Source: Heteronotia binoei
Taxonomy: Eukaryota
Length of the DNA stretch: 64,000 nucleotides
Direction of reading: 5' to 3'
NCBI RefSeq assembly: GCF_032191835.1
Contig: NC_083227.1
Location: forward strand, 112,778,001-112,842,000
In this document: positions 1-10,110 of the stretch, piece after piece
Position numbering within the stretch: position 1 is the first letter of the stretch
How the letters are laid out: every line of letters starts with the position of its first letter
Made by a program: the position numbers and the translations under genes
Notes under the pieces: generated by a model
The model's input: only the letters and a program-made list of their open reading frames with translations
What the model was told of the DNA's origin: nothing
The model's database searches: none

Positions 1-809
1 AACAACATAAAATGCATCATTTATAACTCAGCGTATAAAATTGTATCAATTGGCATAATTATGGAGTGTAAAAGTATAAATGTCTTAGTTTTCTACAGAC
101 AAAACTGACAAAGCCACCCCATCTTAAAATGAGAGAGCTGCAAACTACAGCACCCTATGCTATCTTAACTAATTTCACCCATTCTGTGAGCAAGACATTT
201 CAAAGCTTTTTTTAAAAAAATGCTTCCCAAAATGTCCAATTTTTTCCACTGGAATAACTGAATGCTATGCACTAAAATCTTGCCTTAAAACATTTTACTG
301 ATTGCAAAAGAACAATTCTTTAGAGGCTTTTCTAAGCATTCCACTAAATCTGATTTGGGAAAATTGAGAAAAGTCCTCATAATTCCATGTTATATATTTT
401 CAATAAGTAAAGTTTTTTTAAAAAACATTTAACTAATGACAAAGTAAAATATTTTCTACAAGGTTTTTTGGGGAGCTTCTCAAAACTTTCCTCTGGAAAA
501 AAAGTCCTAAAAACACACCCTTTTTTCTCCCAAATGTTGCCACAATTTTTTCCAGGTCTTCATAGCTCTAACTGGGGCACCCTCATTTTTTAACCGCTTC
601 CATATCTCTTACTCTCTTAAACTTTTGACAACTAAAAAGGCAATTCTTTTTTCTCCAGTTTTTGTTGAGGTTTTTCTTTTGGGGGGAAGGGTGAATTATG
701 GAGGCCTGCCTTTTACACTGCTTTTAAACATTAATCTTAGGCTGACGAAGTTGGTGGGCCCAGCCTGCCCATCCGGTTATACCGCCGGACAATTCGGTCG
801 CACCATGAC

Positions 810-1015
810 GTAGCAAACTCTGTGAAAACGGGGGGGACCAGCGAGAAGGTGTTGCTACGGATGCAGTAATGCAGGAGAGGCCATTGCAGTGACCATCTGC
901 CAGGCATAGCCAGACAGTGACCACACGGCGTTCACTACACCGGGAGAGGAGAGGCTATGTATTGCGCATGCACTTTCCCTGGGGGGGTAGGATTCCCAGA
1001 GGGAGCCCACCCCCC
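810..1015 (-). ncRNA. Candidate HDV/CPEB3-like self-cleaving ribozyme in the inverted RTE 5' UTR
   Basis: Minus strand: P1 GGGGGG (1015-1010) with C7 (836-830); P2 GUAGCAAC (858-851) with GUUUGCUAC (818-810); P3 ACC/GGU; L3 UUCUCGCU; GU after P1; J4/2 CAGA with candidate catalytic C at 822. Manual fold only. Confidence 0.6.
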
Positions 1016-1696
1016 ACCACCCCCAACTTCGTCAGCCTAAGAGAAGGAAAACTCTAACATCAAACCCGGGCAGATAGAGCTCGTTAATGTAACACCTACC
1101 ACCTGGAGGACTCACTGCCGGCGTCCCGGCTTACTGGGCCATGGCAGATGACCCCCAGGTGAAAGGGTGGAGCCAGTACCGCGCACACTGCGCTTCACCT
1201 AAAAAATCCCTCTGCGCAGGCCTGAAGGGCATATCCACACACACAACCCACAACGCATCAAGTCCTGCAGCGATAGGCAAGGGGCGAAACGGCAGGTGGA
1301 AGGTGCCACTGGAAGCCGCAGTCCCGATCCTGCATGTAGGCGGTTCAGGATATTGGTCGCCTGATGCTAACCCGGAGACGAAAGCATCTTTCGGCAGCAC
1401 CCTGAACGACCAAGCAGCCTTATCTAGGGACAGCACTGCTTGCTCCACACGGAGAGGGGCCTAGAAAAGGTGGCCTAAACAAAGCTCGTCTCCCCCACCC
1501 CAGTTGGCTAGCCGCGGTCAACGGGCATCCTTACTTGCGGTCGAAAAATAACAACAAAGAAAAGGCATGCACCTGCCTCACAAAGTGTGCAAAGACTAAA
1601 GCTTGCATGTTGGAACATCAGAACCATGCTTGACACAGTAGGCAGTGGTCGCCCTGAACGACGCTACGTTTAGGATGTCCCCCAAGGTTCCTCAGC

Positions 1697-2941
1697 ATGA
1701 TCATCCAGCTACACGAAGACCAGCGAGGCCAAGTCAGACACTGCAACGACCTCTCGGAGCCCTTCCCAATAGGCACAGGTGTAAAGCAAGGCTGCGTTCT
1801 CGCGCCAACTCTCTTTACGATCTTCTTTAGCATGATGCTTCAAAGAGCCGCAGTAGATCTAGATGAGGACGATGGTGTCTACATCCGCTATCGCACCGAT
1901 GGCAGCCTGTTCAACCTGAGGCGACTAAAGGCACACTCCAAGACAATGGAAAAACTCATCCGAGAGCTACTGTTTGCTGATGATGCTGCACTCGTCTCTC
2001 ACTCGGTATCAGCTCTGCAGCATATGACGTCCTGCTTTGCAGAGGCTGCTAAGCTATTCGGCCTAGAAGTTAGTCTGAAGAAGACAGAAGTTCTCCACCA
2101 GCCTGCACCCCAGGAAGATTATCACCCTCCCTGCATCACTGTGGGTGAATCAGTTCTGAAGACAGTCCAGCAGTACAGCTACCTGGGGTGCATCATCTCC
2201 TCAGATGCCAAGATCGACAAGGAGATTGACAACAGGCTGGCAAAGGCAAACCGTGCATTTGGCCGACTGCACAAAAGAGTGTGGAGCAACAAGCATCTGA
2301 AAAAAGGCACAAAGATCAATGTTTACAAAGCGGTTGTGATGACAACCCTCATCTATGGCTCCGAATCGTGGGTTTTATACCGTCATCACCTGCGACTCCT
2401 TGAGCGCTTTCATCAGCGCTGCCTTCGCACCATCCTCAACATCCACTGGAGTGACTTTGTGACCAACACTGAAGTCCTCAAGCGGGCAGAGGTTACCAGC
2501 ATCGAGGCACTGCTGTTGAAGACGCAGCTGCGCTGGGCAGGGCATATTTCTAGGATGGAAAACCACCGCCTTCCCAAGATTGCCCTGTATGGCGAACTCT
2601 CCACCGGCCATCGAAATAGAGGGGCACCAAAGAAGAGGTACAAGGACTCCTTGAAGAAATCCCTTAGCACCTGTCACATCAACCATCACCAGTGGTCTGA
2701 CCTAGCCTCAGATCGCAAAGCATGGAGGCACACCATCCACCAGGCTGTCTCTTCCTTTGAGAACACACGCATAGCTGGTCTTGAGGACAAAAGGAGATTG
2801 AGGAAGAATCGCACTGCTACAGGACCAACCCTAAATCAGACTTTTCCCTGCAGCCGCTGTGGCCGGACCTGCCTGTCCCACATTGGTCTTGTCAGCCACC
2901 AGCGAGCCTGTAGCAAACGTGGACTACTGCACCCTTCTTAA
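1697..2941 (+). pseudogene. RTE ORF remnant: C-terminal reverse transcriptase region plus C-terminal Cys/His motif (414 aa, uninterrupted)
   Basis: GVKQGCVLAPTLF, LLFADDAAL, YLGCIIS motifs; ends CSRCGRTCLSHIGLVSHQRAC. Endonuclease and N-terminal RT are missing through a deletion junction near 1665. Confidence 0.9.
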
Positions 2942-3958
2942 ATCTTCGTTCGCGAAGCCAAGCCGAGAGAGAGAAACATTAATCCCTTGTCACTAACAGC
3001 TTTAATGATTTTATGCTCTATTATTAAGCTTATTAAAGTGTATTAAAAGTTTTACTTTTTTGGAAGAAATTGTTAAAAATGTTAACTAGGATAGCTTCTT
3101 TATTCCCAATACCGAAGCTGTAAATATGTAGATCTTTATATGGTTAATATCAATACTATACTCTTAAACTTCTCATGTTATAACAAAAACATATTAAAGG
3201 GTTTATCAAAAACTCAGCATTCAGTGAAAGTTCCACTAACAAAGAGACATTCTTAAAGCTTTAAAGTTGTCAACAGCTTCTGAACAACTGCATATTTATT
3301 ATGATCTTCTACAGAAGATCTGCTCCGGATGACCCCATTTTCTAAGGTGTGAGGCAAGGGGCAGGGTCATCTTAGTGTGGAATTGTTTTCCTTTGCACAT
3401 CTACCACTAGCTCCCATCATTACTGTCTCAGGTATTGGCTAAAAACTTGTTTACTTGGGCTTTTAAGTTTATGACCCATGGCATAATATGTGCTGCTGTT
3501 TTATTCTATCATTTTAATGGCTCTGTTTATTTTAAGATATATAGTATTTTTATATACTGTCATTAAACACATGGGAAATCAGCCTTTGGTTGAAAGGTGA
3601 GGCATATATCTTTTAAAATAAATAAAACTATTAAGTAATGAATGAGCAAGGTGACATAAAATCTAAATATAGCAGAAAAGGATCCCAGGAGTTGCAGGAA
3701 ATTTTATTGTAGCAAAGAGAAAGTAGTAGAATATTCTTTACATATCAATCAGCTTCTCCTTTCACCTTAATGAAAGGTTTTGCCTAATAATTTTCTTGGA
3801 CTGGTAGAAGTTAGGAGTCCTCACTGATCATGCCTTGTGTCCTTTTGCTAGTTACCTGAGGAGAGATGGGAGCATAAATCTTCTCAGGTAAATTATACTT
3901 GGGGTAAATCAGTTGTCCCTTTTTAAATTTAGAATACAGAGAAATGTGGCTGTAGATA

Positions 3959-4548: not shown

Positions 4549-5770
4549 CTCTAGAACTTTTTCCTTTTAGGACACTGTCACCTGAACATTAGTAGATGAT
4601 GCCGCCAAAGTACAGCCTGTTAACACTTATAGATCACTTTTTTAAAACCCAAAATCACCTGGGGCAAAAAAAAATAACCACAAAAATATACGACTACTGC
4701 CAGCAGGGTCATTTTTCTGCTCCATGAATTTATTATCCAGAGAACTATTTTAAAGTGCACTGCAGCACTGGCAACCTTAATGACAAATTGCAGAATATTT
4801 ATTGCACCAAAGAGAGAATACCTGTTGAGTAGAAAAATACTCCAAGGTACAAAAATGTAAGAAATCAGTTTTACTTATTTTCCTTTAAAATTCATATTAG
4901 TCATCCAATATCTTAGCTATAATTATAATTTTCACCTATCCCCCTCCTCCCCTCTTTGTGGCAGTCCTTAATTTTCCTCCTCTTGCTATTCCTGGGGGTT
5001 CCCAATCCCCAAGAAGCTGCATTTCAGTGAGCATTTCAAGGTGTACCATGGGGGGAGAGGTTTCCATATTTCTGTGCATGGATTTAAAACAGGATCCAAT
5101 CTATAATAAGGGAGTCCAGGAAAAAAAGTTCTTTAAAGAAAACCTTTATGGCTTTGGCAAAGTTACTGAAGTACAGTTTTAGAAAACCATCCAGAAATCC
5201 TGTGGCATGATTATGCCAAAGTCTAAGAGAAAATTGTTTACATGCCCATATATTCAAGAATAAGATACATATACGTGAAATAAATATTCGACAAGCGAAG
5301 ATCAGGTGAAGGCAGCAGCTACACTAACACTACCCTTAATTTAAACAACACAATGTAACGCCCCAAGAGCAATTTTAGAGCATAATCAACAAGATAAGAT
5401 GGTACTCACTACAGGGTTTTTTTAAGACTTCATATTTTAAACAGAGAATTAGAGACTGACACAATCTCTCTCACTAAAAAAAATCCCAACATAGATCCAA
5501 AAGGTACCTTTGGCAATTCCTCTTTCCACTCATTCACACTAAAAAGCAGTCTTGCAGATAAGGGAGACCTGCAGCCACCAAAGGAAGAAGTGTAGGGATT
5601 ATGCCGGCAAAAGGGAAGTGGCAGAAATTGCCTCCTGTTTTATGCTCCATTCAATCCACCCCGCTATCAACCCCTGTACCAGATTCAGCACCATTCCTGA
5701 GAGTTCTCAATTTTCACAAGAGACATTTTGGGAAAGGAGGAGCACAATGAGCAGGGGGAAAAAAAGATCT

Positions 5771-5935
5771 GAGTTTAGCAGCACTTTAGAGACCAGCAAG
5801 TGTATCAGGGTATAAGCTTTCAAAGGGAGCTTTGACTCATGAAAGCTTATACCCTGAAACTCTTGTTGGTCTCTAAGGTGCTACCAGACTCAAATCCAGC
5901 TCTGCTACTGCAGACCAACACAGCTACCTGCTGAA
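5771..5935. mobile_element. Penelope-like element terminal remnant with inverted-repeat architecture
   Basis: Arms at about 5771-5821 and 5841-5892 are reverse complements. The TTGGTCTCTAAGGTGC...CAGACCAACACAGCTAC tail recurs near 34600, 54075 and 57905. Confidence 0.6.
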
Positions 5936-9199: not shown

Positions 9200-10110
9200 C
9201 TGCCACAAACGCGGAATGCGAATCCTGAGATCAGCGAGTTATCTCGCAGCCTACAGCAGCACTGGGGCCACCGGAGAAAGGGGAGGGCAACAAGGCTGAG
9301 TTATCTCGGCCACAGAAGGAACGAAGATAAACCCCTCCCCCTCCCAGAGTTTAAGCAGAAGCTCAACAACAACACGCGCACGCACTGTGAGCAAGCACGC
9401 AAAACCTCCCACCCATCCGTGGGCCTCACCGCCAGGTCCTGGGGAACGGCCCCACTCATAGCCCGTACGGTTCCGCTCCTCCAGGCCCGGGAGGGCAGTG
9501 CAGGCCCAGGCTCCGGCCCCACCGCCTCGCCTTCGCCCGGACCCGCCACCAGCAACAGCAGGAGTCGCTTCCCCACGGGGGAGGCTGCCGCGTCCGCCAT
9601 CCCCGCCGGGCAGGAGCCGTCTCCTCCGCCGCCGCGTCTTCGAGCCCAACGGCCACCACCGGAACCACCGAGCGAGCCAGCAACAGCCCTAAGCAGGGCC
9701 CCCCCACCACAGCCCGCCCTGATCCCGGCGTGCCCCGCGCCAGACGCTTCTCTCCTATCCCGGCGTGCCTCACGTAAGCCAGACCGTCCCTCGTCCTGAG
9801 CTACCGGCGTGCCTTGCGCCAAGCCTTATTTATTTACTTCTCCACTCCCGGAATGCACTGTGGCCGCTTGCTTGGCTTTTGCGTCAGAGTGGAGGTTTTC
9901 TCCATTGGGCATAGTGCTGGGGCAAACCTCCCTTCGACGTCCATGACTATTAAAAGCAGAAGTCTTGCCACCGACGGTCATCTCGCTATTACCCACGCCC
10001 TACCACCAAAACACTTTCGATGCCCAAGTGCTGCACCTGTTAGGGAAAAGTCCAACCTCGGAACGGCTAAACTAGAATATCGTGTAGAGGTGCGGCCTTC
10101 CCTGTGCTAC
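9200..10110 (-). promoter_or_regulatory. KDM3B: CpG island / promoter and 5' UTR of KDM3B
   Basis: GC- and CpG-rich segment around exon 1 in an otherwise CpG-depleted background. Confidence 0.8.
9430..9600 (-). CDS. KDM3B: Lysine demethylase 3B, coding exon 1 (57 aa)
   Basis: [16 protein letters not shown]...[20 protein letters not shown] matches the recalled KDM3B N-terminus; phase-0 donor GCG|GTGAGG; synteny with FAM53C and CDC25C. Exon 2 not found in the window. Confidence 0.95.

What the first reader, a model, noticed from the sequence alone, without database searches (positions are those of the whole stretch)
810..1015. Candidate HDV/CPEB3-like self-cleaving ribozyme placed in the sense strand of KDM3B intron 1
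Seen on the minus strand: GGGGGG (1015-1010), about 150 nt of hairpin-rich linker, then GUAGCAAC-ACC-UUCUCGCU-GGU-CCCCCCC-GU-UUUCA-CAGA-GUUUGCUAC. This maps onto the nested double pseudoknot: P1 G6/C7, P2 of 7-8 bp, P3 ACC/GGU, an 8-nt L3 one base from HDV UCCUCGCU, a single C-G P1.1 plus U-U as in CPEB3, no P4 helix, and J4/2 C-A-G-A with the catalytic C at 822. Established: RTE-clade LINEs carry HDV-like ribozymes at their 5' ends, often with long J1/2 inserts, and P4-less minimal HDV-like ribozymes exist. Inference: the predicted cleavage G (1015) sits at the inversion breakpoint, as expected if it was the RNA's 5' end. The LINE body is antisense to KDM3B, but the inversion flips the ribozyme into the KDM3B pre-mRNA sense. 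That would be a recently created, CPEB3-like intronic ribozyme that could cut nascent KDM3B transcripts.
Basis: partly seen in the sequence, partly recalled or inferred. Interest (0 to 1): 0.88.

Follow-up and report, generated by a model that had tools for sequence, protein, structure and literature searches.

The report
HDV-like ribozyme motif of a LINE
The flagged sequence is the 5'-terminal module of a very young, roughly 3,400-copy reptile LINE, it fits the hepatitis-delta-type self-cleaving ribozyme well beyond chance, and here it sits flipped into the sense strand of KDM3B intron 1; cleavage itself, and any effect on KDM3B, remain untested.

Summary
The motif is not a one-off: about 3,400 copies of its core exist in this genome. 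They form the first ~216 nt of a 4.2-kb single-ORF (endonuclease plus reverse transcriptase) LINE with a (GA)n tail.

For the ribozyme reading:
- A strict HDV descriptor hits once in the 5' UTR, nowhere else in 128 kb, and in 0 of 20,000 shuffles.
- P3-L3-P3' is nearly identical to the HDV ribozymes.
- One P2 pair changed compensatorily (G-C to A-U) between subfamilies.
- Insertion 5' ends fall at the starts of G runs long enough to form P1.

Against it:
- No Rfam match.
- No P4.
- P1 and P3 never vary, so they carry no covariation.
- RNA reads were uninformative.

The likelier cleavage site is 5' of G1024, the true family 5' end and inversion breakpoint, not G1015.

The 5' inversion, the target-site duplication and the KDM3B intron-1 sense orientation all hold. 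The claimed effect on KDM3B is speculation.

The scan noted the same motif on another piece of this genome (s1-328426).

Verdict: a probable new member of a known ribozyme kind.

The parts
735..2973 (+). One LINE insertion: inverted 5' module, rest of the 5' UTR, internal deletion, 3' half of the RT ORF, (GA)n tail
   Evidence: Flanked by the target-site duplication AACATTAA at 727-734 and 2975-2982. Family structure.
735..1024 (-). First 290 nt of the LINE (e1-e290, where e = 1025 - window position), inverted relative to the body and therefore in KDM3B pre-mRNA sense
   Evidence: In about 25 of 30 loci and nearly all of an unbiased 30 this segment is in LINE sense at the element's 5' terminus. 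The window and L002-L005 have it inverted with the same junction.
1018..1024 (-). G run 1 (GGGGGUG): proposed P1 5' strand, with cleavage 5' of G1024
   Evidence: It is the 5' end of the family by target-site duplication in L031 and L032. It pairs 6 of 7 with the C7 at 830-836.
1010..1015 (-).
   Evidence: It makes a 6-bp perfect match to 830-835, but in the MFE and centroid folds it pairs locally with 981-991. 11 of 27 copies of old subfamily A start exactly here.
859..1009 (-). J1/2 insert, 151 nt (159 nt if P1 is run 1), folding into hairpins
   Evidence: Fold. Subfamily differences here are mostly pair-preserving transitions. R2 ribozymes have J1/2 of 216-498 nt (PMC3774820).
851..859 (-). 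P2 5' strand (C)GUAGCAAC
   Evidence: Pairs with 809-818. The pair e169/e213 (window 856/812) is A-U in the young copies and G-C in all older ones.
837..850 (-). P3 ACC, L3 UUCUCGCU, P3' GGU
   Evidence: The HDV antigenomic ribozyme reads ACC-TCCTCGC-GGT (PMC11055280). The genomic one has L3 TCCTCGCT (string found in 14 papers). The only fixed L3 change in the family is at the fourth L3 base (T to C in old subfamily B).
830..836 (-). C7, P1 3' strand
   Evidence: Its length is polymorphic in decayed copies.
819..829 (-). P1.1 GU (G829 with the L3 base C845), 5-nt linker UUUCA in place of P4, J4/2 CAGA with the candidate catalytic C822
   Evidence: CPEB3 P1.1 is one G-C pair plus a U-U, and its J4/2 is 4 nt long (PMC4836649). 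The linker is 5 or 6 nt in different subfamilies.
809..818 (-). P2 3' strand GUUUGCUAC(G)
1020..1042 (.). Inner arm of a 23-nt inverted repeat (its partner is 735-757), created by the inversion with an 18-nt duplication of e273-e290
   Evidence: I5, 96% complementary. In the pre-mRNA sense strand the arms form a stem that encloses the whole motif (z = -4.5).
1043..1665 (+). Remainder of the LINE 5' UTR in LINE sense, ending at an internal deletion junction 1665|1666
   Evidence: Full-length copies continue into the endonuclease domain after the equivalent of 1665.
1697..2941 (+). C-terminal part of the RT ORF (414 aa)
   Evidence: The full ORF of 1074 aa carries Exo_endo_phos and RVT_1.
9430..9600 (-). 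Coding part of exon 1 of the host gene (KDM3B by its N-terminus)
   Evidence: The [19 protein letters not shown]...AVPQDLA is followed by GT. A JmjC exon lies on the same strand at C5:112726311-112726460. The gene name rests on my memory of the human N-terminus.

Best explanation
Window 809-1024 (minus strand) is a copy of the 5'-terminal module of a young, high-copy LINE with RTE-type architecture. That module is an HDV-like, P4-less self-cleaving ribozyme with a ~150-nt structured J1/2 insert.

In the family it would free the LINE RNA from upstream read-through transcript at the element's first base. P1 is formed by a 5'-terminal G run and the C7 that follows P3. P2 is the covarying hairpin. 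C822 is the general acid.

The 5' end has two G runs and the module has two C runs. Run 2 (1015-1010) mainly pairs with the local C run, and run 1 (1024-1018) forms P1. Where run 2 is long enough it can take over P1 and give a second cleavage register.

The window copy arose in one retrotransposition event, with a twin-priming-type inversion of the first 290 nt and an internal deletion. It lies antisense in KDM3B intron 1, so the intact module is transcribed in sense as part of the pre-mRNA.

Shown: the anatomy, the family membership, the orientation, the significance of the motif and one compensatory pair. Inferred: catalysis, the cleavage site, and any effect on KDM3B.
For: - Letters at the stated coordinates.
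- About 3,470 genomic matches to the 20-nt core against 168 for the control.
- Position at the 5' terminus in sense in nearly all copies, with boundaries proved by target-site duplication.
- Single ORF with endonuclease and RT domains.
- Strict descriptor: one hit in the UTR, none elsewhere in 128 kb, 0 of 20,000 shuffles.
- P3-L3-P3' is near-identical to the HDV ribozymes. P1.1 and J4/2 are as in CPEB3.
- Long J1/2, missing P4, and P1 mismatches at the top of the stem are documented for R2 ribozymes.
- HDV-like ribozymes at RTE 5' ends are established.
- P2 pair e169/e213: GC in 39 copies, AU in 16, other in 1.
- The sites that vary between subfamilies are the fourth L3 base and the P4 linker.
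- 5' ends: 0 of 15 old-B copies (run 2 is only GGGG) start at run 2, against 11 of 27 old-A copies (run 2 is G6-7). Fisher p = 0.0035.
- Gene context.
Against: - No Rfam HDV-family match, even with lax filters on 71-236 nt.
- P1 and P3 are invariant, so only one evolutionary event supports any helix, and that helix (P2) would also exist in a plain hairpin.
- The MFE fold extends P2 instead of forming P3. Forcing P1 and P3 costs 14.7 kcal/mol before any pseudoknot bonus.
- P1.1 is a single pair, and there is no P4.
- In young copies only 2 of 36 start at run 2, and run 1 gives only 6 of 7 P1 pairs.
- RNA reads show no pile of ends, and 5 reads in one run continue past 1015 into other sequence (low depth, reads on both strands).
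- The strict descriptor was written after the fact.
Confidence: 0.6

Rival explanations
1. This is an ordinary LINE 5' UTR. It has a conserved hairpin (the 'P2' stem, extended as in the MFE fold) that serves the element in another way, such as an internal promoter or a protein-binding element. It also has G and C homopolymer runs produced by slippage. On this reading the HDV resemblance is coincidence and the 5' ends are set by transcription initiation.
For: - The MFE and centroid folds contain the long hairpin without a pseudoknot.
- The whole 225-nt fold is unremarkable (z = -1.0).
- The relaxed topology is common.
- No Rfam hit.
- The inherited 9-nt extension upstream of G1015 shows that most template RNAs were not cut at G1015.
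- Some RNA reads cross the site.
Against: - 0 of 20,000 shuffles meet the strict descriptor.
- A 13-14-nt near-identity to the HDV P3-L3-P3' lies exactly inside a hairpin, followed by the complement of the terminal G run and preceded by C-N-R-A.
- 5' ends track the length of the G runs.
- A review states that RTE elements lack their own promoters.
Confidence: 0.22
2. This is a relic. The module descends from an HDV-like ribozyme but cleaves poorly or not at all in this family, because of the single-pair P1.1, the missing P4 and the competing local hairpin. It is kept for another role of such 5' structures, for example in translation or in reverse-transcriptase template handling.
For: - Weak P1.1 and no P4.
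- A stronger alternative pairing.
- RNA reads that run through the site.
- HDV-like ribozymes are proposed to aid translation initiation.
- Large ribozymes need a stable J1/2 'pinch' for fast cleavage, and the predicted J1/2 here has no single closing helix.
Against: - The catalytic C, the L3 U, C and G, and P3 are kept in all subfamily lineages over roughly 10-15% divergence.
- The 5' ends coincide with P1-capable G runs.
- R2 ribozymes with little or no P4 are reported among R2 elements.
Confidence: 0.15

Closest known systems
HDV-like ribozymes at the 5' ends of non-LTR retrotransposons (R2, R4/Dong, Baggins, L1Tc, mosquito RTE drz-Agam-2)
   Same: Position at the element's first bases. Nested double-pseudoknot order. 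Conserved P3/L3/P1.1 core. Long J1/2 inserts. Variable or missing P4. P1 of 6-7 bp with mismatches at the top. Role in release from a co-transcript (PMC3774820, PMC6765202, PMC4908430).
   Different: The host is a reptile LINE with RTE-type architecture and thousands of near-identical copies. P1 is a G/C homopolymer helix with two possible registers. P1.1 is one pair. No activity data exist, and no Rfam model matches.
HDV genomic and antigenomic ribozymes
   Same: P3 ACC/GGU is identical to the antigenomic form. L3 differs by one base from the genomic TCCTCGCT. J4/2 begins with C and ends R-A.
   Different: There is no P4, J1/2 is 151-159 nt instead of 1-2 nt, and the second P1.1 pair is replaced by U-U.
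Mammalian CPEB3 intronic ribozyme
   Same: It lies in sense in an intron of a protein-coding gene. P1 is G-rich. P1.1 is one G-C pair plus a U-U. J4/2 is 4 nt.
   Different: CPEB3 is a single-copy element conserved across mammals and has a P4. This is one recent transposon copy among thousands, it lacks P4, and a 23-bp inverted repeat clamps it.
Twin-priming 5' inversions of LINEs
   Same: An inverted 5' segment is followed by a sense 3' segment inside one target-site duplication. There is a small duplication and microhomology at the junction.
   Different: The inverted piece reaches the very first base of the element. The same junction (e1 joined to e273) recurs in at least five independent insertions.

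Membership tests
HDV-like self-cleaving ribozyme | Order P1-J1/2-P2-P3-L3-P3'-P1'-P1.1-(P4)-J4/2-P2', giving a nested double pseudoknot | tested here: met
   My own descriptor finds it in both registers. 0 of 20,000 shuffles meet the strict version.
HDV-like self-cleaving ribozyme | Core bases: catalytic C opening a 4-nt J4/2 (C-N-R-A); L3 with a 5' U, the P1.1 C and the G of the U.G wobble | tested here: met
   CAGA at 822-819 and L3 UUCUCGCU. Compared with HDV and CPEB3. These bases are kept in all subfamilies.
HDV-like self-cleaving ribozyme | Helices supported by covariation | tested here: inconclusive
   P2 has one compensatory pair (GC 39, AU 16). P1 and P3 never vary in the family.
HDV-like self-cleaving ribozyme | P4 helix | tested here: not met
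   Only UUUCA (5-6 nt) lies between P1.1 and J4/2. P4 is reported as dispensable in some R2 ribozymes, so this does not exclude the fold.
HDV-like self-cleaving ribozyme | Match to a curated Rfam model of the family | tested here: not met
   No HDV, CPEB3 or drz model hit at E up to 10 on 6000, 236 or 71 nt. This is expected for a P4-less motif with a 150-nt insert inside P1.
HDV-like self-cleaving ribozyme | Site-specific Mg2+-dependent self-scission giving 5'-OH and 2',3'-cyclic phosphate ends | not testable with these tools
   RNA reads were too sparse and lay on both strands.
Retrotransposon 5'-end ribozyme | The cleavage site coincides with the 5' end of genomic copies | tested here: met
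With P1 formed by run 1, the site is the base next to the target-site duplication in L031 and L032.
RTE-clade LINE | Single ORF with AP-endonuclease and RT domains, no ORF1, microsatellite-like 3' tail, target-site duplication | tested here: met
   A 1074-aa ORF with Exo_endo_phos and RVT_1. (GA)n tail and duplications of 8-11 bp. Architecture as described in PMC13295347.
RTE-clade LINE | Placement of the RT within the RTE clade by phylogeny | not tested
   No tree was built.
CPEB3-type intronic ribozyme | Single-copy, orthologously conserved intronic element in sense of the host gene | tested here: not met
   Sense orientation in intron 1 holds. However, this is one of about 3,400 transposon copies and a recent insertion about 99.5% identical to other copies.

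The most novel reading that the evidence does not exclude
The module is a fast, active ribozyme with two usable P1 registers. The inverted copy in KDM3B intron 1 cuts the nascent pre-mRNA about 8.4 kb downstream of exon 1. This lowers or truncates KDM3B output from the allele that carries it. The 23-bp clamp may hold the two halves together. It would be a newly born, possibly polymorphic, CPEB3-like regulatory ribozyme created by a LINE 5' inversion.
Probability: 0.1. Interest if true: 0.75.

Novelty: new member of a known kind. Interest (0 to 1): 0.52.

Why it matters
If cleavage is confirmed, this would add an amniote LINE of RTE-type architecture, with thousands of young copies, to the retrotransposons that process their RNA with an HDV-like ribozyme.

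It would also be a natural P4-less example with a long J1/2 insert and a homopolymer P1 that can slip between two registers. That would link ribozyme register to the heterogeneous 5' ends of LINE insertions.

Every sense-oriented copy in an intron, including this inverted one in KDM3B, would then be a potential co-transcriptional cut site. That makes the family a natural experiment on how intronic ribozymes affect host genes.

Tried and rejected
- **Rfam scans** at three scales found no HDV-family hit.
- **A relaxed topology-only descriptor** proved non-specific, with 83 cores in 128 kb, and was dropped as evidence.
- **Thermodynamic folding** does not favour the pseudoknot helices, and the region's z-score is ordinary.
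- **RNA reads** from three raw runs gave zero depth on the intron flank. Depth on the repeat was 5-40 and came from other copies. There was no pile of ends, so the reads neither support nor refute cleavage.
- **A search for a second family with the same core but other helices** (pattern with non-family flanks) gave 24 hits against 29 for the control. The recurring 16-mer TACCTCCTCGCTGGTG belongs to an unrelated repeat with no P1 or P2 partners.
- **Naming the host gene by tool** failed: the atlas search on the 57-aa exon gave nothing, and a paper search for the peptide gave nothing. The JmjC exon on the same strand is indirect support.
The breakpoint is 1024/1025.
- **Simple slippage as the only source of the upstream G run** was considered and rejected, because the spacer base is subfamily-specific (T or A) and therefore inherited.

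Full report
**Observation.** These are G6 at 1015-1010, a 151-nt linker, then GTAGCAAC / ACC / TTCTCGCT / GGT / C7 / GT / TTTCA / CAGA / GTTTGCTAC from 858 to 810, with the proposed catalytic C at 822.

**What the sequence belongs to.**
- A search of the window's own genome and pairwise mapping show that window 735-1665 is the 5' untranslated region of a LINE.
- Full-length copies (L031, L032) are about 4.2 kb. They have one 1074-aa ORF carrying Exo_endo_phos and RVT_1 domains, a (GA)n tail, and target-site duplications of 10-11 bp.
- The 20-nt core of the motif occurs about 3,470 times in the genome, against 168 for the reversed control.
- I number the element e = 1025 - window position, so e1 is window 1024.
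- The motif lies in LINE sense at e1-e216, at the very 5' end, in about 25 of 30 loci similar to the window. The same holds in nearly all of an unbiased sample of 30.
- In L031 the element starts with GGGGGTGGTGGGGGGTGGGC directly after the duplication. L032 has two more G at that end.

**The window copy.**
- The insertion spans 735-2973 between AACATTAA duplications.
- It consists of e290 to e1 inverted (735-1024), then e273 to e913 in sense (1025-1665), then an internal deletion, then the last 414 codons of the ORF and the tail.
- The 18-nt overlap plus C/G microhomology creates the 23-nt inverted repeat 735-757 / 1020-1042.
- Four other insertions with different flanks share the same junction but have different outer ends. 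Other 5' inversions and many 5'UTR-to-3'-end deletions also occur in the family.
- The inversion is therefore real and of the twin-priming type, as another note of this scan also said (s1-330178).

**Host gene.**
- An [19 protein letters not shown]...AVPQDLA followed by GT lies on the minus strand at 9430-9600.
- I recognise this N-terminus as KDM3B from memory. Tool attempts to name it failed.
- A JmjC exon lies on the same strand 52 kb beyond the window's left edge.
- No motif that I recall from the next exon of human KDM3B occurs in the window.
- So 810-1024 lies about 8.4 kb into intron 1, and the minus strand is the pre-mRNA sense.

**Is it an HDV-like ribozyme?**

Against chance:
- The bare topology is common.
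- A descriptor carrying the family's sequence constraints hits only here in 128 kb and in 0 of 20,000 dinucleotide shuffles. It was written after the fact.
- P3-L3-P3' (ACC-UUCUCGCU-GGU) matches the antigenomic HDV ribozyme ACC-UCCUCGC-GGU (PMC11055280). It is one base from the genomic L3.
- A P1.1 of one G-C pair plus a U-U, and a 4-nt J4/2, are the CPEB3 arrangement (PMC4836649).
- The unusual features have precedent in R2 ribozymes: J1/2 of 216-498 nt, P4 too short to fold, P1 of 6-7 bp with mismatches at the top, and even a 4-nt P1 (PMC3774820).
- HDV-like ribozymes at RTE 5' ends are established, and those elements are said to lack their own promoters (PMC6765202).

Family comparison:
- I fetched older subfamilies (82-95% identity) and aligned 57 copies (A1).
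- The P2 pair e169/e213 is A-U in the young and intermediate copies and G-C in all older ones: GC 39, AU 16, other 1. This is one compensatory event.
- P1 and P3 never vary, so they are neither supported nor contradicted.
- The changes fixed between subfamilies within the core are at the fourth L3 base (U in HDV, A in CPEB3, U or C here) and in the length of the linker that replaces P4. Both are positions known to be free.
- Subfamily differences in J1/2 are mostly pair-preserving transitions in the predicted hairpins. This is weak evidence.

**Cleavage site.**
- The 5' end carries two G runs and the module carries two C runs.
That duplex is -21.8 kcal/mol, against -13.2 kcal/mol with the distal C7.
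- Run 1 (1024-1018, GGGGGUG) can pair 6 of 7 with the distal C7. That puts cleavage at the element's first base.
- Old subfamilies have perfect G6-7 runs in run 1.
- The spacer base after run 1 is subfamily-specific (T, or A in old B), so run 1 is inherited rather than added at each insertion.
- In old B, run 2 is only GGGG, and 0 of 15 insertions start at run 2. In old A, run 2 is G6-7, and 11 of 27 insertions start exactly there (Fisher p = 0.0035). In young copies 2 of 36 start at run 2.
- This fits 5' ends set by whichever G run can form P1. I therefore prefer cleavage 5' of G1024 in the window, which is exactly the inversion breakpoint, with G1015 as a minor register. This step is inference.

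**Evidence against, and limits.**
- No Rfam model matches.
- The unconstrained fold prefers a plain extended hairpin and is not unusually stable (z = -1.0).
- Forcing P1 and P3 costs 14.7 kcal/mol in a model that cannot credit pseudoknots.
- RNA reads from three raw runs gave no depth on the intron flank. Depth on the repeat was low, lay on both strands, and came mostly from other copies. There was no pile of ends, and a few reads ran on past 1015. Expression data therefore decide nothing.
- In the window's pre-mRNA context the 23-bp arms clamp the whole module. After a cut they would keep the two halves paired.

**Verdict.**
- The best reading (confidence about 0.6) is a genuine HDV-like ribozyme module of a LINE with RTE-type architecture. 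It is a new member of a known kind.
- The scan noted the same motif on another piece of this genome (s1-328426).
- The KDM3B consequence is possible but unsupported, and it is not special to this locus beyond the inversion that places the module in sense.

Noticed in passing
window 1020-1025; L002-L005: The same inversion junction (reverse complement of e1 joined to e273) recurs in at least five insertions. They have different flanks and different outer ends (e290, e275, e275, e261, e260). This suggests either microhomology-driven recurrent twin priming between the G-rich 5' end and CCACC at e268-272, or a transposing inverted subfamily.
   Followed up: partly
window 1665|1666; L002, L036, L040, L046, L049, L051, L058: Many copies join part of the 5' UTR directly to the 3' end of the element. 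The deletions start between e267 and e1064. The window's and L002's deletions start 5 nt apart. These are possibly template switches or non-autonomous derivatives.
   Followed up: partly
5' termini of L006-L101: The first 10-15 bases (G runs with T or A spacers) are far more variable among copies than the rest of the element, even among copies more than 99% identical. Run 1 is 5 G in L031 and 7 G in L032 at boundaries defined by target-site duplication.
   Followed up: partly
L043 and L049: Other 5' rearrangements occur. L043 has e2-68 inverted, followed by e61 onward. L049 has a head-to-head pair of about 1,060-nt 5' regions.
   Followed up: no
window 1141-1464 (+): A 107-aa ATG ORF lies inside the LINE 5' UTR in LINE sense. 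It is not known whether it is conserved or coding.
   Followed up: no
L102-L107 (for example G000:C1:149199800-149200540): An unrelated interspersed repeat beginning AGGGTTGCCAGGTCT carries TACCTCCTCGCTGGTG, an exact HDV-type P3-L3-P3' string. It has no P1 or P2 partners, so it is a chance look-alike.
   Followed up: yes
window 5766-5896: A 57-nt inverted repeat (86% complementary, 17-nt loop) gives a sub-threshold MIR2670 match (36 bits against a gathering score of 117). It is probably a hairpin-forming repeat.
   Followed up: no
window 735-1340, RNA runs X10-X12: Most RNA reads laid on the LINE 5' UTR carry variants of other subfamilies (for example 745 A>G, 925 A>G, 1208 C>T). The expressed copies are therefore largely not the window's own.
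   Followed up: no
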